A stretch of 63,779 bases of DNA, the filler included, from Octopus bimaculoides (taxonomy: Eukaryota), in the NCBI RefSeq assembly GCF_001194135.2. It is 8 parts of 7 records of this genome, joined end to end, with 100 filler letters (N's around TTAATTAATTAA, not from the genome) between each part and the next. Parts side by side here need not be neighbours in the genome. Positions count along the whole stretch, not along the records: positions 52,743 to 58,907 come from NC_069009.1; 7 more parts are not named here. One strand, 5' to 3'. Under the pieces are notes generated by a model. That model saw only the letters and a program-made list of their open reading frames with translations, was not told the DNA's origin and ran no database searches. The position numbers and the translations under genes are program-made. This document shows, piece after piece, positions 52,574 to 58,746 of this stretch. Every line of letters begins with the position of its first letter. Position 1 is the stretch's first letter.

Positions 52574-52811
52574 TAGTTTTATTTTTATAACGTGCTTTCA
52601 CTTCACTACCGAGCGCAGCTCTGTGCGCCTTGGGTATGTGCTNNNNNNNNNNNNNNNNNNNNNNNNNNNNNNNNNNNNNNNNNNNNTTAATTAATTAANN
52701 NNNNNNNNNNNNNNNNNNNNNNNNNNNNNNNNNNNNNNNNNNCATACATACACAAGTGAGTGGACAAATGAAAGAAGGTCACTCAACCAATTTATTGGGA
52801 GTTACACATGA

Positions 52812-52965
52812 ATCAAAACAGTTTGATTCAAATTCATTGGTACTCTTGAGTTTCAATCGTGATGCTAGTCATCAGCCATTTTGAATTTGAATACCAAATG
52901 GCGGACAACTAGCATCATGCTTAAAACTCAAGAGTACCAACGAATTTGAATCAAACTGTTTTGAT
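52812..52965. repeat. Long hairpin: 42-bp outer arms (1 mismatch) plus an imperfect inner stem
   Basis: atcaaaacagtttgattcaaattcattggtactcttgagttt at 52812-52853 vs 52924-52965; inner pair tgatgctagt/actagcatca. Confidence 0.9.
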
Positions 52966-53000
<35 letters not shown>

Positions 53001-53275: not shown

Positions 53276-53777
53276 TCATGATGACAGTAGCATCCACAAG
53301 AGCCGCAGCAACATGAGTGTGACAGATGGGGCACCGAGTCCCGGCAAGGATCAGTACTTGCCGCCCAGATATGAGGACCAACCCTACAGCCAAAACTACG
53401 ACCCCAACTACGATGATTATTACCAGCCAAATTATGAGAACAACCCTGACACTGCAGAGAACATCAAAGGGGACCAATACTATGGTGACGGTGCCGAGGA
53501 TTATTACCCTGAGGGCACTGAAGGTTACTATGGTGATGGTTACTATGGCGATGGTTACTATGGCGACGGTTACGATGGTGAAGACTCCAATAACTATGGT
53601 AATTACAACTATGATGATGGTGCCTATGAGGAATACCAGCGCAAACGGCAGAGTGGTCTCTCGAATGCTGGGGCCAATGATGTCCCCCTTAAATTCTCAA
53701 GCGGTCATCCGAAAGATGATGACAAAGGGGATGGCTCTGGAGGGACAGGACATAATGTAATGACCACTTTTGTTTAA
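53276..53777 (+). CDS. Terminal coding exon of an L1-family (neuroglian/NrCAM-like) CAM: divergent cytoplasmic tail, 166 aa plus stop
   Basis: Acceptor ttgtttttctttcag at 53261-53275, phase 2 as in the human L1CAM last exon. EDSNNYG...DDGAYEEYQRK aligns to DDSLADYG...EDGSFIGQYSGK, and NVMTTFV* resembles NrCAM NAMNSFV*. Non-repeat coding-like composition. Confidence 0.65.
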
Positions 53778-53784
53778 ACATCAG

Positions 53785-54445
53785 GGGAGGAGAGTATGAA
53801 TGTGCCTTGAGAGGGTGAGTAATCGGTGTGGCAGATAACACCCTCATCTCTTACTCCACACTCCCCAGCCCAACTGTCCCTTAATGTCCCTTTGCCCTCA
53901 TCTGCTATTTTCTAATTACCCCTTCCTTTTCCCACCACCATCCAAGTCTCTCTTCTTTTACCTCTGTCTCTGTGCACAAACACACACACACACATACATA
54001 AACACAATCATCTGCACACATGTTTATGACCTTGTGGTTAGAGTATTGAACTCACAATCTAGCAATCATGGTTTCAATTCCTAGACCAGGTGGTACATTG
54101 CTTTTTGAGCAAAAACACTTCATCTCATGTTACTCTGTGATCACTTCAACACCTGACCTTTGCTACACAGTGCAATGTCAGAGAGGAGAGAATCGGTGGT
54201 GGAAAATATGTGCCTTGAGAGGGTGAGTGGGCAGCCTGGCAGATAGCACCCTCATCTTTTATTCCACACTCTCCAGCCCAAATTTCCCTTAACATCCCCT
54301 TGCTTTCATCTGATCTTTTCTAGATACCCCTCCCTTTCTCACCACCATCCAAGTCTCACTTTATTTTTTATCTTTATCTCTGTGCACAAACATTCACACA
54401 CACACATACATGCATACATACATACATAAACACAATCATATGTAT
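53785..54445 (+). repeat. Diverged ~220-bp direct duplication immediately 3' of the stop codon, with a SINE between the copies
   Basis: atgtgccttgagagggtgagt...ccaccatccaagtctc...ctctgtgcacaaac at about 53800-54015 and 54208-54440. Confidence 0.8.
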
Positions 54446-56844
54446 ATGCACACACACACATGTAATATATAGTTCAGAAATGAGATCCAGAGATTCTCCA
54501 TACAGAAGACAGTAGTGCTCAAAAGATTCTAACTTAGACTCCATTGTCTTTACAAGGGGTCATTCCACAAGGTAAAGAAAGGCCTATAAGAGGGATCAAA
54601 TTGAGTGGATATAAAGGCAATTATGTTGGTAAACAAATTCGACTCATCAGATATATTAAATACATCAAAAACAAAATATGTATATATGTTTACATGCCAA
54701 ATGAGAGAAATCTAAAAGTGGAAACCTTCAGATGAACTTTTATGTATAAATATATAAATTTTATACTGAGTGCAAAAGACAGATAAACGATGTGTCGAAT
54801 TTGTTTATCCACATAATTGTCACTCTCTCTTTCTTCCCCCCCTCTCTCTCACTGGCACCTCTCCCACCCCCACATTCTCTGCTTCCATCCATCCCTCTAT
54901 CCCTTCACACACACACTATATTACCCTATGTCCATGCTTGCTTCTCACTCTCCCCACCACACACAAACTACCACCACTGCCACCGTCTTATGGATAACTG
55001 CCCTCTTCTCCACCTCTTCCATTCCCTCTCCCCCCCCCCATCTTTGTAAATGTGTAAATATGTTAATTTGTCATTTTTGTTTTATACATTCCAGCCTACA
55101 CAGACATATACATATATATATATATACACATATACTATGCACATGTACAATACATATATGTATATACTGCATTATATATAGATGTATATGTGTGTGAATA
55201 TATATATATGTGTGTTTCTGCACACATGTATATACATATATACATTGTATATGTATATATATTAAATGTTGGACTGCTTTATATATCTCAATATTATAAA
55301 ATTACTATCACTACTCCACCCCATTTAAATGAAACTAAACTGTTATATACACACATATGTATAGTGTGTATACACATACATATATATTTACACCTATGTT
55401 TTCTAATGTTTTTATATGATTTTTATATACACATATTTTAACATACTATGGTGTAAAGTGCAGAAGGGTATAAAGTCAGACATTATTATTATCATTTTTA
55501 TTATTATCATTATTATTATGTGGTCAACTTTGCCTTCCCTCTTTTTGGAGCTGACTTACACTTTCCCCCAAAATTACTGACTTTGTGCCAACGTTTGAAA
55601 CTATTATTATTATTTAATACGCTGCACAATATCCAATATCATGATGCTGTGGATTGAAGATATTGTGTCTACCAGGAGTTTGTACTGTCTGTCAAATCAC
55701 AACAAGGACCTCGGACAGTACTTTACACAAAATGCATGCATTTCCAAGTAAGGCCAATTTTTGCAATACACCCAGATTGTACGGCATTTCTAAATTCTTA
55801 TTTGGGTATGTGCTGTGCTTTGTTGTCGTTCTCTTATTTTCCCTGTAGATTATTACTATTATTATTGTTATGCCTTGTATTCACATATTCATGATTTTAG
55901 CAGTAACGGGTTTGTCCTCTCTGCTTGTATTTTGTATACCAGATGAAAAGTAAATATTTTTTAAATAGTTCTGTGTTGGTGTTTTTTTCTTTTTTTGTAT
56001 TCTGTAAACAAAAAATTATTTTTGTGCATGTATTATCATCAGCACAACCACCGTCATCATCGTCATCGTCATCGTTAACATCACCTTCATAATTATCACA
56101 TAATCTATCATAATCAGCATCATCATCATTACCATTATTGTATTATTTTATCTTTTACTTGCATCAAGCATTAGACTGTGGGCATGTTAGGGCACTGCCT
56201 TGAGGAATTTTTTGTTGAATCAATTGACCCTTTCTACTTGTTTTTTTTTTTTTTCTTTTAAGCCTGGTACTTATTCCATTAGCCCCTTAAATCATTAAAA
56301 TATATGTTCAGTAATTAAGGTTTAATCAAAGATTAAATAATTTAATGAGTAACAATATTATTATAGGTTGTGTGTGAGTAAAAGATGGGATGGTCACAAT
56401 TGGAACGTCTGACTGGATCTCGACTGACCTGGGGTTAAACAACAACTATAGCCACTAATACTAATTACTACACTATACATTAAGATAATGTAATCCTAGG
56501 TACACTATGCCTGAATAAAAGATGGGATGGTCACAGACTGAACATATTCGATCATTGGTCTGTCAGGATCAGGACTGACCTGGGGTTAANNNNNNNNNNN
56601 NNNNNNNNNNNNNNNNNNNNNNNNNNNNNNNNNNNNNNNNNNNNNNNNNNNNNNNNNNNNNNNNNNNNNNNNNNNNNNNNNNNNNNNNNTTGTTGACACA
56701 ACAACCAGCATTCTTTAACCACCACCAATACTACCACCACCACCACCACCACCACCACCACTACCATTACCACACTCACTGCTACCACCAGGGACACAAG
56801 AGATGACAGGCATAGGGAGAAATATAGATGTGTCTCAGCCACCA

Positions 56845-56986: not shown

Positions 56987-57192
56987 TCCAACGCCAGAAA
57001 TCCTATGGTTCCGAAGTTCCAAAGTGAGTAGAATGCAAATAGAGCAGAATACAAAGCATCCGTTTTCCAGCTTCAGTCATCAACTCAATATTCTGGATGT
57101 TAGGTTTGAGGATGAGGGAAATTATGAATGCTACGGACGTGTAAGAAGTTTCGACCAGATGTTGCAACGATCCATGACAGTGAAGATTGAAT
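56987..57192 (+). CDS. Nrg: Internal exon of a neuroglian/L1CAM-like Ig cell adhesion molecule (C-terminal half of Ig3)
   Basis: tctcattctcag acceptor and gtaagc donor. Translation x-PTPEILWFR...QLNILDVRFEDEGNYECYG...MTVKIE shows the I-set W and L.I..V..ED.G.Y.C motifs. Phases 2 and 1 match L1CAM (G-F|PTP; VTVE-A|AP). Confidence 0.88.
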
Positions 57193-57345
57193 GTAAGCCT
57201 GAATAATTATTCCGTTATTCCTTCATTCTTTTTCTACTGGTTTCAGTCTTCGGTCTATGGCCATGCTGTAGCATTATCTTCAAGACGTTTGAGTGGTCAT
57301 ATCAAGCCCAGCATTTGTAGACTTGTACATGATGCATATGTTTCC

Positions 57346-57389
<44 letters not shown>

Positions 57390-57478
57390 ATGTATGTATG
57401 TATGTATGTATGTATATAGGTGTGTTTGTTTGTTTATATATATAGGTGTGTATGTGTATATTTATGCATATATATATG

Positions 57479-57524
<46 letters not shown>

Positions 57525-58094
57525 NNNNNNNNNNNNNNNNNNNNNNNNNNNNNNNNNNNNNNNNNNNNNNNNNNNNNNNNNNNNNNNNNNNNNNNNNNNN
57601 NNNNNNNNNNNNNNNNNNNNNNNNNNNNNNNNNNNNNNNNNNNNNNNNNNNNNNNNNNNNNNNNNNNNNNNNNNNNNNNNNNNNNNNNNNNNNNNNNNNN
57701 NNNNNNNNNNNNNNNNNNNNNNNNNNNNNNNNNNNNNNNNNNNNNNNNNNNNNNNNNNNNNNNNNNNNNNNNNNNNNNNNNNNNNNNNNNNNNNNNNNNN
57801 NNNNNNNNNNNNNNNNNNNNNNNNNNNNNNNNNNNNNNNNNNNNNNNNNNNNNNNNNNNNNNNNNNNNNNNNNNNNNNNNNNNNNNNNNNNNNNNNNNNN
57901 NNNNNNNNNNNNNNNNNNNNNNNNNNNNNNNNNNNNNNNNNNNNNNNNNNNNNNNNNNNNNNNNNNNNNNNNNNNNNNNNNNNNNNNNNNNNNNNNNNNN
58001 NNNNNNNNNNNNNNNNNNNNNNNNNNNNNNNNNNNNNNNNNNNNNNNNNNNNNNNNNNNNNNNNNNNNNNNNNNNNNNNNNNNNNNNNNNNNNN

Positions 58095-58131
<37 letters not shown>

Positions 58132-58220
58132 ATGTATGTATGTATGTATGTATGTATATAGGTGTGTTTGTTTGTTTATATATATAGGTGTGTATGTGTA
58201 TATTTATGCATATATATATG

Positions 58221-58267
<47 letters not shown>

Positions 58268-58345
58268 GAATGTACATTTGTGTGCATGTATGCCTGCACA
58301 TATATATATGTGTATGTGTATATTTATGCATATATATTATATGTA

Positions 58346-58381
<36 letters not shown>

Positions 58382-58611
58382 AATGTACGTTTGTGTGCAT
58401 GTATGCCTGCATGTAGGTGTGGGTGTGGGTGTGAACAGAGAACAGGGGTGAGATTTCCTTGTTAGTATGTCTGAAAGAGTACATGTGATGTATATATCTT
58501 CATTCAGACCCATTGGAACTTATGCTTATATAATGTCTCGTGATGGCATTAGATGATGTGTGCGTAGCCCTACAGACCACAGATTATGGTTGTTATTGTT
58601 GTGTGTTTCAG

Positions 58612-58746
58612 CTAAACCTGAATGGACCACAAAACCAAAAAGTATTGTGACCAGTCCTGGCAGTTCAGCTACCTTCATCTGTAATGGAACCAGCAAACCT
58701 CCCATCTACAAGCCCATGTGGTACATCAATGGAAAGAGAATTAACA
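58612..58746 (+). CDS. Nrg: Internal exon of the neuroglian/L1CAM-like gene (N-terminal half of Ig4)
   Basis: gtgtttcag acceptor and gtaagt donor. It joins the previous exon in frame (t|ct = Ser): SKPEWTTKPKSIVTSPGSSATFICNGTSKPPIYKPMWYINGKRIN (P.W...P, C, W.ING). Confidence 0.88.

What the first reader, a model, noticed from the sequence alone, without database searches (positions are those of the whole stretch)
53276..53777. L1-family cytoplasmic tail rewired: ankyrin FIGQY motif lost, 24-tyrosine acidic insert gained, PDZ end kept
Seen: the exon encodes 24 Tyr in a 94-residue D/G/N/Y-rich stretch, including YYGDG x4 (three from a 15-bp tandem at 53523-53567), then EDSNNYG..DDGAYEEY and a C-terminal TTFV. 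Known: L1, NrCAM and neuroglian tails have the nearly invariant DS..DYG...EDGSFIGQY ankyrin-binding site, regulated by Tyr phosphorylation, and NrCAM ends in a class I PDZ motif. Inference: a lineage-specific paralog that has swapped ankyrin coupling for a multivalent phosphotyrosine or aromatic low-complexity (condensate-prone) signalling tail, potentially a new kind of neural adhesion receptor in cephalopods.
Basis: partly seen in the sequence, partly recalled or inferred. Interest (0 to 1): 0.72.

Follow-up and report, generated by a model that had tools for sequence, protein, structure and literature searches.

The report
Octopus neuroglian's tyrosine-rich, ankyrin-motif-less tail exon
This is the last coding exon of an already annotated octopus "neuroglian" (L1-family adhesion receptor) gene. 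Its disordered, acidic, tyrosine-rich tail lacks the usual ankyrin-binding motif, and that feature belongs to an old paralog found across molluscs, not to cephalopods alone.

Summary
Window 53276-53777 (+) is a real terminal coding exon of 166 codons. It has 24 Tyr, all within 94 residues, YYGDG four times, a 15-bp tandem repeat, and ends in TTFV followed by a stop codon.

The exon is residues 1203-1368 of Octopus bimaculoides "neuroglian(-like)" (XP_014776254.1, XP_052833792.1), a protein with Ig and FN3 domains and one transmembrane segment. It is therefore already annotated and is an L1-family gene.

No isoform, and no sequence in the gapless O. sinensis locus, encodes FIGQY or matches the Pfam model Bravo_FIGEY. 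The exon is under purifying selection between the two Octopus species (omega 0.29). AlphaFold predicts the tail to be disordered.

- The tail type is not specific to cephalopods. Orthologs in cuttlefish, limpet, vent snail and freshwater mussel form a clade with 100% bootstrap support. They share Tyr/Asp-rich tails without FIGQY, mostly ending in [ST]-x-[FC]-V. A separate clade of canonical molluscan neuroglians keeps FIGQY.
- The proposed motif-for-motif alignment to the ankyrin site is no better than chance.

The most likely function is an ankyrin-independent docking tail with a PDZ ligand, a PPxY motif and possible phosphotyrosine sites. This function is inferred, not shown.

The Ig exons further along the piece belong to a neighbouring gene built from duplicated copies of the neuroglian Ig region.

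The parts
53276..53777 (+). Terminal coding exon of O. bimaculoides neuroglian (the clade B L1 paralog). It encodes 166 residues, HDDSS...TTFV, followed by a TAA stop.
   Evidence: The sequence shows an acceptor CAG at 53273-75 and the reading frame. The translation is 100% identical to residues 1203-1368 of XP_014776254.1. It maps to L001 74638-75139, which is the end of the annotated CDS. The O. sinensis ortholog has the same acceptor, and omega is 0.29.
53277..53354 (+). Ser-rich segment of 26 residues, HDDSSIHKSRSNMSVTDGAPSPGKDQ. It is invariant between the two Octopus species.
   Evidence: 26 of 26 residues are identical, with dN = 0 and dS = 0.16.
53361..53372 (+). PPRY, a PPxY-type motif that is a candidate WW-domain ligand.
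   Evidence: PP.Y is also present in O. sinensis, O. vulgaris, cuttlefish (PPSY), Patella (PPSY) and Sinanodonta (PPEY, PPSY). The shuffle probability per tail is 0.05-0.14, so any one occurrence is weak. The recurrence across the clade is what is suggestive.
53355..53636 (+). Tyr/Asp/Gly/Asn-rich low-complexity region of 94 residues, with 24 Tyr and a net charge of about -22.
   Evidence: Composition is. Omega is 0.22 against O. sinensis, with indels in the repeat array. AlphaFold pLDDT is below 50 throughout. Tyr makes up 8-14% of the tail in all clade B orthologs, against 3-5% in canonical tails.
53519..53581 (+). 15-bp tandem repeat encoding (GYYGD)x3 plus GYDGE. The copy number and unit sequence differ in O. 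sinensis.
   Evidence: TRF reports 4.2 copies with 89% matches. O. sinensis has GYYGD-GYNAE-GYNAE-GYYDD-GYYGN-DYYGD.
53625..53636 (+). YEEY, the Y-E-[ED]-[YP] motif conserved across clade B tails.
   Evidence: The motif is found 26-86 residues from the C-terminus in 6 of 7 clade B tails. It is a candidate SH2-type site (inference) or the remnant of the ancestral ...AEYG... segment.
53685..53699 (+). PLKFS, a possible vestige of the ancestral ...DP[AS]KFNEDG-SFIGQY ankyrin-site flank. FIGQY itself is absent after it.
   Evidence: P.KF[DNST] lies at -25 to -52 from the C-terminus in 5 of 7 clade B tails and at -32 and -33 in canonical Lottia and Ruditapes. The shuffle probability per tail is 0.003-0.02. 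The Sinanodonta clade B tail aligns SETDS..Y.D..P.KF..G...STFV to canonical tails with p 0.02-0.06.
53763..53777 (+). C-terminal TTFV, a class I PDZ-ligand consensus, plus the TAA stop.
   Evidence: The sequence shows it directly. -[ST]-x-[FCL]-V ends 6 of 7 clade B tails and the 3 canonical protostome tails. It is the only stretch that the profile-profile comparison aligns.
56987..57192 (+). NOT part of this gene. This is an Ig exon (second half of Ig3) of a neighbouring gene built from duplicated neuroglian Ig modules.
   Evidence: Pfam matches Ig_3 and I-set. The best solved-structure match is neurofascin residues 263-365, E 1e-18. It is 77% identical to module 3 of O. sinensis hemicentin-2-like but only about 42% identical to the neuroglian gene's own Ig3 exon.
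58612..58746 (+). NOT part of this gene. This is an Ig exon (first half of Ig4) of the same neighbouring gene, in phase with the previous exon.
   Evidence: Supported. It is 81% identical in nucleotides to the neuroglian gene's own Ig4 exon at L001 23036-23226.

Best explanation
Window 53276-53777 is the constitutive last coding exon of the Octopus bimaculoides gene annotated as "neuroglian". This gene belongs to an ancient molluscan paralog group of the L1/neuroglian family, called clade B here.

Clade B keeps the L1-type ectodomain and single transmembrane segment. Its cytoplasmic domain is no longer the canonical one. The KGGKY juxtamembrane box and the FIGQY ankyrin-binding site are both absent. 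In their place is a long, intrinsically disordered, strongly acidic tail rich in Tyr.

In octopus the terminal exon supplies, in order:
- an invariant Ser-rich segment;
- a PPxY motif;
- a 94-residue Tyr/Asp/Gly/Asn low-complexity region, whose GYYGD units expand and contract by replication slippage;
- a conserved YE[ED]Y motif;
- a possible vestige (P-x-K-F) of the flank of the old ankyrin site;
- a C-terminal class I PDZ ligand (TTFV), of the same kind that ends canonical molluscan and insect neuroglians.

The most likely mode of action is an adhesion receptor uncoupled from ankyrin and spectrin. It would be anchored and clustered through PDZ scaffolds. It would recruit WW-domain proteins through PPxY, for example Nedd4-type ligases or MAGI-type scaffolds, which carry both WW and PDZ domains. 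It would also serve as a multi-site substrate for tyrosine kinases and a docking platform for SH2 or PTB proteins.

Shown here: gene identity, family, absence of FIGQY and Bravo_FIGEY, conservation, predicted disorder, and the phylogenetic spread. Inferred only: every binding partner and any phosphorylation.
For: **Identity.** An exhaustive phmmer search finds a single hit, 100% identical, at the C-terminus of a 1368-aa protein. That protein is XP_014776254.1 / XP_052833792.1, "neuroglian". All six isoform models end in this exon. The piece is 100% identical to CM046629.1, and the exon is the end of the CDS.

**Family.** Pfam finds Ig and fn3 domains. The solved-structure search returns neurofascin, contactin and Drosophila neuroglian FN3. 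In an NJ tree the protein falls inside the L1 family, with 100% bootstrap support against a contactin outgroup.

**Loss of the canonical tail.** PF13882 is absent from the exon and from the whole proteins of octopus, cuttlefish and Patella. The same model hits the canonical Lottia and Ruditapes proteins at 3e-18 and 4e-20. There is no FIG.Y in any tail. There is no FIGQY-like exon anywhere in the gapless 116-kb O. sinensis locus.

**Pan-molluscan clade.** Clade B has 100% bootstrap support and a topology that follows the species tree. The canonical Lottia and Ruditapes proteins form a separate clade, also at 100%. Clade B tails are 8-14% Tyr against 3-5% in canonical tails, and they share PPxY, YE[ED]Y, P.KF and [ST]x[FC]V.

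**Constraint.** Omega is 0.29 for the exon and 0.22 for the Tyr-rich part.

**Disorder.** Mean pLDDT is 44, and the only predicted secondary structure is a juxtamembrane helix.

**Transcription of the ortholog.** The intact 1303-aa cuttlefish ORF sits on contigs of about 4.4 kb without introns, in assemblies of 110 sequencing runs.

**Precedent.** The PDZ motif of Nrg180 and the FIGQY motif within the terminal exons of Drosophila nrg are described in PMC3627646.
Against: - No binding, phosphorylation or localisation data exist for this protein.
- PPxY and YE[ED]Y are short motifs in a Tyr-rich background, with shuffle p of 0.04-0.14 per tail.
- Positional conservation across the low-complexity region is poor. 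The C-terminal third of the exon evolves fast, with omega 0.69.
- The Physella ortholog model lacks both the PDZ end and PPxY.
- The Drosophila Nrg180 PDZ motif was dispensable in the assays reported in PMC3627646.
- Octopus transcripts were not inspected directly. Support comes from gene models only.
Confidence: 0.6

Rival explanations
1. The Tyr-rich stretch has no specific function. It is a slippage-generated low-complexity spacer drifting neutrally between the membrane and a functional PDZ ligand.
For: - A 15-bp tandem repeat with indels and unit changes between two congeners.
- Tails cannot be aligned position by position across classes.
- phmmer finds no homolog of the exon outside the Octopus cluster among 1.84 billion representative proteins.
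Against: - Omega is 0.22 in the Tyr-rich part, and the first three repeat units differ only synonymously.
- Tyr enrichment (8-14%) and net acidity are kept in cephalopods, gastropods and a bivalve. This argues for selection on composition.
Confidence: 0.2
2. The tail is a condensate-forming sticker-and-spacer domain, in which aromatic residues drive phase separation beneath adhesion sites.
For: - The low-complexity region is 25% Tyr with G/N/D spacers.
- The tail is predicted to be disordered.
- Tyrosines promote phase separation of disordered regions, including the acidic nephrin intracellular domain (PMC5704491).
Against: - The net charge of about -22 over 94 residues should oppose self-association unless a polycationic partner is present.
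- Nothing was tested.
Confidence: 0.12
3. FIGQY is not lost. It is carried by another exon or isoform of the same gene, as in genes with alternative terminal exons, and this exon is just one isoform-specific end.
For: - Drosophila nrg has two alternative terminal exons (PMC3627646).
- The octopus gene does splice cytoplasmic cassette exons alternatively.
Against: - All 6 O. bimaculoides models and all 5 O. sinensis and O. vulgaris models end in this exon.
- Six-frame scans and tblastn with canonical tails find nothing in L001 or in the gapless L002, flanks included.
Confidence: 0.03
4. The exon is mis-assigned, because L1-type Ig3 and Ig4 exons lie downstream of a "terminal" exon on the same strand. 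That order would suggest a mis-assembly or a different gene.
For: - The Ig exons at 56987-57192 and 58612-58746 follow the stop codon.
- A 100-N gap lies between the stop codon and those exons.
Against: - The Ig exons are paralogous to the gene's own Ig3 and Ig4 exons, not identical to them.
- They match module 3 of a separate O. sinensis gene at 77%.
- In the gapless O. sinensis assembly the same terminal exon ends the gene, and no Ig exon lies within 10 kb.
Confidence: 0.02

Closest known systems
Canonical protostome neuroglian (Drosophila Nrg180; Lottia LOTGIDRAFT_174928; Ruditapes neuroglian-like)
   Same: - Ectodomain of 6 Ig domains plus FN3 domains, and a single transmembrane segment.
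- About 30-33% identity over the alignment.
- A terminal exon that ends in a class I PDZ-type motif: -TLV or -TFV in the sequences read here. The Nrg180 PDZ-binding motif is reported in PMC3627646.
   Different: - Canonical tails are about 100 residues long and 3-5% Tyr. They match Pfam Bravo_FIGEY and contain KR.RG.KY and SETDSMAEYGDVDPSKFNEDGSFIGQY.
- The octopus tail is 214-257 residues long and 12-14% Tyr. It has neither motif and no Pfam match.
C. elegans LAD-2, the "non-canonical L1CAM" (PMC2213605)
   Same: An L1-type ectodomain paired with a completely divergent cytoplasmic tail that lacks the ankyrin-binding motif. It coexists with a canonical paralog, SAX-7.
   Different: - The LAD-2 tail is only 40 residues long and has no known motifs.
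- It arose from an independent, nematode-lineage duplication.
- It has no Tyr-rich low-complexity region and no reported PDZ end.
Vertebrate NrCAM, neurofascin and CHL1
   Same: L1-family architecture. A bird CHL1 read here keeps ...FNEDGSFIGAY.... That NrCAM carries a C-terminal PDZ ligand is from my own knowledge and was not tested here.
   Different: All of them keep the FIG[QA]Y motif and the KGGKY box. Identity to the octopus protein is 25-27%.
Nephrin intracellular domain (a functional analogy only)
   Same: A disordered, acidic, tyrosine-bearing tail of an Ig-superfamily adhesion receptor, whose tyrosines matter for phase separation (PMC5704491). Docking of Nck SH2 on phosphorylated YDxV motifs is from my own knowledge.
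   Different: - The family is unrelated: the ectodomain is nephrin/SYG-2 type.
- The octopus tail has no YDxV motifs.
- The analogy is untested.

Membership tests
L1/neuroglian family of IgSF adhesion receptors | Signal peptide, six Ig domains, three to five FN3 domains, one transmembrane segment, type I topology | tested here: met
   Pfam finds Ig and fn3 matches in P0001, P0128 and P0009. A hydrophobic segment, LYGMLVALLILVCIAIALYVL, precedes the tail. The O. bimaculoides models lack Ig6 only because of assembly gaps and junk exons; O. sinensis has it.
L1/neuroglian family of IgSF adhesion receptors | The ectodomain groups with L1-type proteins rather than with contactins, sidekicks or DSCAMs | tested here: met
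   An NJ tree over 1185 columns gives 100% bootstrap support for L1-type proteins, including the octopus clade, against Mya contactin. Named hits rank neuroglians first (E down to 1e-261) and sidekick or DSCAM much lower. The match to the Drosophila neuroglian FN3 pair, 1cfb, has E 9e-39.
L1/neuroglian family of IgSF adhesion receptors | Cytoplasmic Bravo_FIGEY domain (Pfam PF13882), including the juxtamembrane K-G-G-K-Y box | tested here: not met
   There is no match at E <= 10 for the exon, E <= 1 for P0001, or E <= 0.01 for P0128, P0009 and P0012. The positive controls, P0018 and P0017, match at 4e-20 and 3e-18. The juxtamembrane sequence is REKISVRRRESYKKNMG.
L1/neuroglian family of IgSF adhesion receptors | FIGQY-type ankyrin-binding motif | tested here: not met
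   No FIG.Y is present in any clade B tail. None is encoded in L001 or L002 in an open frame. Actual ankyrin binding cannot be tested with these tools.
L1/neuroglian family of IgSF adhesion receptors | C-terminal class I PDZ ligand. This feature defines a subset only: Nrg180, NrCAM and the canonical molluscan neuroglians. | tested here: met
   The octopus protein ends in TTFV. The other clade B tails with this ending have DTCV, SSFV, DTFV or STFV, and the canonical tails end in ATLV or STFV. Binding was not tested.
Contactin family | GPI anchor, with no transmembrane segment or cytoplasmic tail | tested here: not met
   The octopus protein has a transmembrane segment and a tail of 214-257 residues. 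The tree separates it from contactin. Contactin-2 tops the solved-structure list only because the deposited constructs are longer.
Sidekick family | Six Ig domains plus thirteen FN3 domains, about 2200 aa, and a C-terminal GFSSFV | tested here: not met
   The octopus protein is about 1400 aa with 4-5 FN3 domains and ends in VMTTFV. The sidekick P0024 is 2181 aa and ends in GFSSFV.
Molluscan "clade B" L1 paralogs (a group defined in this report) | Monophyly with the Patella, Gigantopelta, Physella, Sinanodonta and cuttlefish proteins, plus an acidic Tyr-rich tail lacking PF13882 | tested here: met
   Bootstrap support is 100%. No paper describing this group turned up.

The most novel reading that the evidence does not exclude
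Molluscs carry a previously undescribed, ancient subfamily of L1 adhesion receptors that does not use ankyrin. Its disordered Tyr/Asp-rich tail would act as a multivalent hub for phosphotyrosine, WW and PDZ interactions, working like nephrin and perhaps forming condensates.

In coleoid cephalopods this could be the main, or even the only, L1-type receptor, if the canonical FIGQY gene has been lost there. Its locus has also spawned tandem arrays of Ig-only modules. Cephalopod neural wiring would then use L1 adhesion without the L1-ankyrin link that is central in flies and vertebrates.
Probability: 0.15. Interest if true: 0.65.

Novelty: new variant of a known kind. Interest (0 to 1): 0.4.

Why it matters
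L1-family receptors are usually understood through their FIGQY-ankyrin link, which controls receptor mobility, synapse stability and axon-domain organisation. This finding points to a conserved paralog, present across molluscs, that has kept the adhesive ectodomain and the PDZ end but dropped the ankyrin and KGGKY modules in favour of a Tyr-rich acidic disordered tail.

That makes it a natural experiment on what L1 adhesion does without ankyrin. It also gives a concrete and cheap set of testable motifs: PPxY, YEEY and TTFV.

The paralog is expressed in cephalopods, as shown by cuttlefish transcripts in 110 sequencing runs. "Neuroglian-like" genes have been reported in octopus neurons, so the gene may bear on the evolution of cephalopod nervous systems.

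The gene itself is already annotated. The gain is one of interpretation, and it is modest until biochemistry is done.

Tried and rejected
- **Word-indexed protein searches.** Searches with the exon and with the downstream Ig exons found nothing. This was an indexing limit, not a true absence: the exhaustive search and a full-length query succeeded.
- **Exact look-up of the 154-aa ATG-to-stop ORF.** Not on record, as expected for an internal exon.
- **Solved-structure sequence search with the exon.** No hit at E <= 10.
- **FIGQY in the preceding exon.** I first suspected this from a mistaken memory of Drosophila nrg. The isoform alignment rejects it, and PMC3627646 corrects the memory: each Drosophila terminal exon has its own FIGQY.
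- **Mis-assembly as the reason Ig exons lie downstream.** The chromosome-level O. bimaculoides record is the same sequence with the same gaps, so it gives no independent check. The gapless O. sinensis locus settled it.
- **Homology between clade B and canonical tails.**
  - hhalign gives probability 1.5% and aligns only the last 7 residues.
  - BLASTP gives E 0.29 for the bivalve tail and E >= 8 for octopus.
  - Smith-Waterman shuffles give octopus p 0.83-0.93 and the Sinanodonta tail p 0.02-0.06.
  - I therefore call the P.KF / SETDS resemblance a possible vestige, not a demonstrated homology.
- **Look-ups of O. sinensis isoform X2 proteins.** These failed because only the longest product is indexed. 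The X1 look-ups worked.
- **ARAGORN and Rfam on the piece.** Only sub-threshold microRNA-model hits, in TA/CA microsatellites and in the inverted repeat.
- **Literature searches.** I found no paper describing this molluscan subfamily.
Full report
**1. The observation**

Window 53276-53777 on the + strand begins directly after a polypyrimidine tract and CAG acceptor (...gtttttctttcag|T). In the frame starting at 53277 it stays open for 166 codons, ending in ...NVMTTFV and a TAA stop at 53775-53777.

The translation has 24 Tyr, 24 Asp and 24 Gly. All 24 Tyr lie within 94 residues (nt 53355-53636), a stretch that is 25.5% Tyr. YYGDG occurs four times. Acidic residues outnumber basic ones 33 to 11. 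Tandem Repeats Finder reports a 15-bp repeat at 53519-53581 with 4.2 copies. Its first three units differ only at synonymous sites.

**2. What the exon belongs to**

Word-indexed searches with the exon failed. An exhaustive phmmer scan of 1.84 billion representative proteins then returned exactly one hit. It is 100% identical over all 166 residues, at positions 1203-1368 of a 1368-residue protein.

That protein is XP_014776254.1, "neuroglian-like", from Octopus bimaculoides. It clusters with XP_052833792.1 "neuroglian" and four UniProt "Neuroglian" entries. All six models end in this exon. They differ only in two alternatively included cytoplasmic cassettes, of 26 and 17 residues, and in a badly modelled region between Ig5 and FN1.

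The piece is 100% identical to GCA_001194135.2 CM046629.1, gaps included. The exon maps to the last 502 bases of the annotated coding range. The exon is therefore already annotated, and it is joined to Ig, FN3 and transmembrane exons.

**3. Family**

Pfam finds multiple Ig and FN3 domains. The solved-structure search returns contactin-2, neurofascin and the Drosophila neuroglian FN3 pair, the last at E 9e-39.

I built a neighbour-joining tree on 1185 aligned columns with a contactin outgroup. All L1-type proteins, including the octopus protein, group together with 100% bootstrap support. The protein has a transmembrane segment and a long tail, so it is not a contactin.

It also has an RKKR site in the third FN3 domain. 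From my own knowledge, this recalls the cleavage site seen in L1-family proteins.

**4. The cytoplasmic domain is not the canonical one**

Pfam Bravo_FIGEY (PF13882) does not match the exon (E <= 10), the whole O. bimaculoides protein (E <= 1), or the O. sinensis, cuttlefish and Patella orthologs. The same model matches canonical molluscan neuroglians from Ruditapes and Lottia at 4e-20 and 3e-18.

No tail contains FIG.Y, and the juxtamembrane sequence is REKISVRRRESYKKNMG rather than KR.RG.KY.

I first suspected that FIGQY might sit in a neighbouring or alternative exon. Three results exclude this:
- The isoform alignment shows none.
- Six-frame motif scans and tblastn with canonical tails find nothing across the O. 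bimaculoides locus or the gapless 116-kb O. sinensis locus.
- In Drosophila, both alternative terminal exons carry their own FIGQY (PMC3627646).

**5. It is not cephalopod-specific**

A full-length search recovered orthologs in:
- O. sinensis and O. vulgaris (84% identity);
- cuttlefish, as Acanthosepion pharaonis "NRCAM" plus transcript contigs (48%);
- the limpet Patella (39%);
- the vent snail Gigantopelta (38%);
- the mussel Sinanodonta (37%);
- the snail Physella (36%).

None of these has a precomputed PF13882 hit. Canonical neuroglians that do have PF13882 came from Lottia (30%), Ruditapes (33%) and a wasp (32%).

In the tree, the first group forms a clade with 100% bootstrap support, and its internal branching follows the species tree. 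Lottia and Ruditapes form a second clade, also at 100%. A limpet and a bivalve occur in each clade, so the duplication predates the split of gastropods, bivalves and cephalopods. I call the first group clade B.

Clade B tails are 136-257 residues long and 8-14% Tyr, with many more acidic than basic residues. Canonical tails are about 100 residues long and 3-5% Tyr.

The recurring elements in clade B are:
- PPxY, in Octopus, cuttlefish, Patella and Sinanodonta;
- Y-E-[ED]-[YP], in 6 of 7 tails;
- P-x-K-F-[DNST], in 5 of 7 tails, at the same distance from the C-terminus as DP[AS]KFNEDG in canonical tails;
- a [ST]-x-[FC]-V end, in 6 of 7 tails.

What is specific to Octopus is the GYYGD array. 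In O. sinensis it reads GYYGD-GYNAE-GYNAE-GYYDD-GYYGN-DYYGD.

**6. Is the tail a "rewired" L1 tail?**

This is not supported:
- BLASTP of the exon against a canonical molluscan tail gives E >= 8.
- Smith-Waterman scores fall below the shuffle mean, with p 0.83-0.93.
- The profile-profile comparison aligns only the last seven residues, at probability 1.5%.

A faint trace of common origin does appear through the bivalve ortholog. SETDSYQGPYEDYQREPTKFDDEG-QPVDTK...STFV aligns with SETDSMAEYGDVDPSKFNEDG-SFIGQY...STFV (p 0.02-0.06).

If this trace is real, the octopus YEEY corresponds to the ...AEYG... segment, and PLKFSSG corresponds to ...KFNEDG. FIGQY's position is then occupied by HPKDDD. I treat this as a possible vestige only.

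**7. Constraint, disorder and expression**

Against O. sinensis the exon has dS 0.27, dN 0.078 and omega 0.29. By segment:
- the first 26 residues are invariant;
- the Tyr-rich part has omega 0.22;
- the last 46 residues have omega 0.69.

AlphaFold, run with the seven-sequence tail alignment, gives a mean pLDDT of 44 with no residue at or above 70. Its only predicted secondary structure is a juxtamembrane helix, which is consistent with intrinsic disorder.

The cuttlefish ortholog appears as an uninterrupted 1303-residue ORF on contigs of about 4.4 kb, in assemblies of 110 sequencing runs. These contigs are spliced mRNAs that link the Ig, FN3 and transmembrane regions to a Tyr/Asp-rich tail ending in DTCV.

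Papers report "neuroglian-like" expression in octopus glutamatergic-like neurons (PMC9795677) and neuroglian peptides in octopus mucus (PMC11431876). I cannot tie those reports to this particular gene.

**8. Mechanism**

Shown: this is an L1-type adhesion receptor with a disordered, acidic, Tyr-rich tail. It lacks both canonical cytoskeletal-linker modules and keeps a PDZ-type C-terminus.

Inferred:
- The receptor is uncoupled from ankyrin and spectrin.
- It is positioned by PDZ scaffolds.
- Its PPxY motif recruits WW-domain proteins. Candidates are Nedd4-type ligases for turnover, or MAGI-type scaffolds, which combine WW and PDZ domains and could bind the tail at two points.
- Its many tyrosines in acidic contexts (YEEY, YENN and others) are kinase substrates and SH2 or PTB docking sites.

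However, the net charge of about -22 over 94 residues argues against simple self-association. Coacervation with basic partners, as described for the nephrin tail, would be the relevant model (PMC5704491).

A purely neutral low-complexity spacer is the main rival. The conservation of composition across classes and the omega of 0.22 argue against it.

**9. The surroundings**

The Ig exons at 56987-57192 and 58612-58746 are in phase with each other. Their best solved-structure match is the neurofascin Ig3/Ig4 region, at E 1e-18. They are paralogous to the gene's own Ig3 and Ig4 exons, not identical to them.

They are 77% identical to the third module of O. sinensis "hemicentin-2-like". That protein is a chain of three duplicated neuroglian Ig1-6 modules and begins with the same signal peptide as neuroglian.

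In the gapless O. sinensis assembly no such exon lies within 10 kb of the stop codon. The 100-N gap at 56590-56689 therefore hides the true distance in O. bimaculoides.

**10. Comparison and verdict**

The closest known relatives are the canonical protostome neuroglians, which share the ectodomain and the PDZ end but have a different tail.

The closest conceptual precedent is C. elegans LAD-2, a "non-canonical L1CAM". Its 40-residue tail lacks the ankyrin motif, and it coexists with the canonical SAX-7 (PMC2213605).

I found no paper describing the molluscan clade.

My verdict has four parts:
- The gene is already annotated.
- The tail type is a new variant of a known kind and is of moderate interest.

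The key open question is whether cephalopods also keep a canonical FIGQY neuroglian.

Noticed in passing
window 56987-57192 and 58612-58746 (+): Two in-phase Ig exons (second half of Ig3, first half of Ig4) belong to a neighbouring gene. It is the ortholog of O. sinensis "hemicentin-1/2-like", which is really three tandem copies of the neuroglian Ig1-6 module behind the same signal peptide. This points to local amplification of the neuroglian ectodomain in Octopus.
   Followed up: partly
window 56590-56689 (100 N): This scaffold gap separates the neuroglian 3' region from the neighbour's Ig exons. In gapless O. sinensis no Ig exon lies within 10 kb of the stop codon, so the gap hides an unknown and probably large distance.
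   Followed up: yes
window 57525-58094 (570 N), flanks 57353-57524 and 58095-58266: The 172 bases before the gap are 100% identical to the 172 bases after it, and the stretch is a TA/TG-rich microsatellite. This looks like an unmerged contig overlap, so the gap may be an assembly artefact.
   Followed up: partly
window 52809-52968: A near-perfect inverted repeat with 79-nt arms, 87% complementary and 2 nt apart, resembling a miniature inverted-repeat transposable element (MITE), lies in the last intron. It is also present at the orthologous O. sinensis position (L002 103397-103557), so the insertion is old.
   Followed up: partly
window 53800-53959 versus 54208-54366: A direct duplication of about 160-200 bp, 83-85% identical, starts about 20 bp after the stop codon, in the presumed 3' UTR. 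The spacing between copies is 408 bp.
   Followed up: no
L001 55785-55862 and about 68831-68881 (upstream of the piece): Two cytoplasmic cassette exons are alternatively included in the gene models. The 26-residue cassette, DDEVEIFTARQINSFYSFVDRLPKLY, contains YSFV, a YxxPhi-type sorting motif. This parallels the alternatively spliced RSLE mini-exon of vertebrate L1, a comparison drawn from my own knowledge.
   Followed up: partly
P0001-P0006, alignment columns 507-613 (L001 about 33.5-36.2 kb): The O. bimaculoides neuroglian protein models carry junk instead of Ig6. One version is the repeat-derived NEFLQLDALPNANHSESVVGAF, twice; its sequence matches several places in the locus. The other begins KHICF.... 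About 31 kb of the 85-kb locus is N. The O. sinensis model has a normal Ig6.
   Followed up: partly
P0001 residues 844-847 (outside the window): An RKKR furin-type site lies in the third FN3 domain. From my own knowledge, this recalls the proteolytic cleavage site of L1-family members.
   Followed up: no
window 55098-55262, 57321-57524, 58096-58412: Sub-threshold Rfam hits to mir-297, mir-466 and mir-3149 models all fall in TA/CA microsatellites. They are chance matches, far below the gathering scores.
   Followed up: yes
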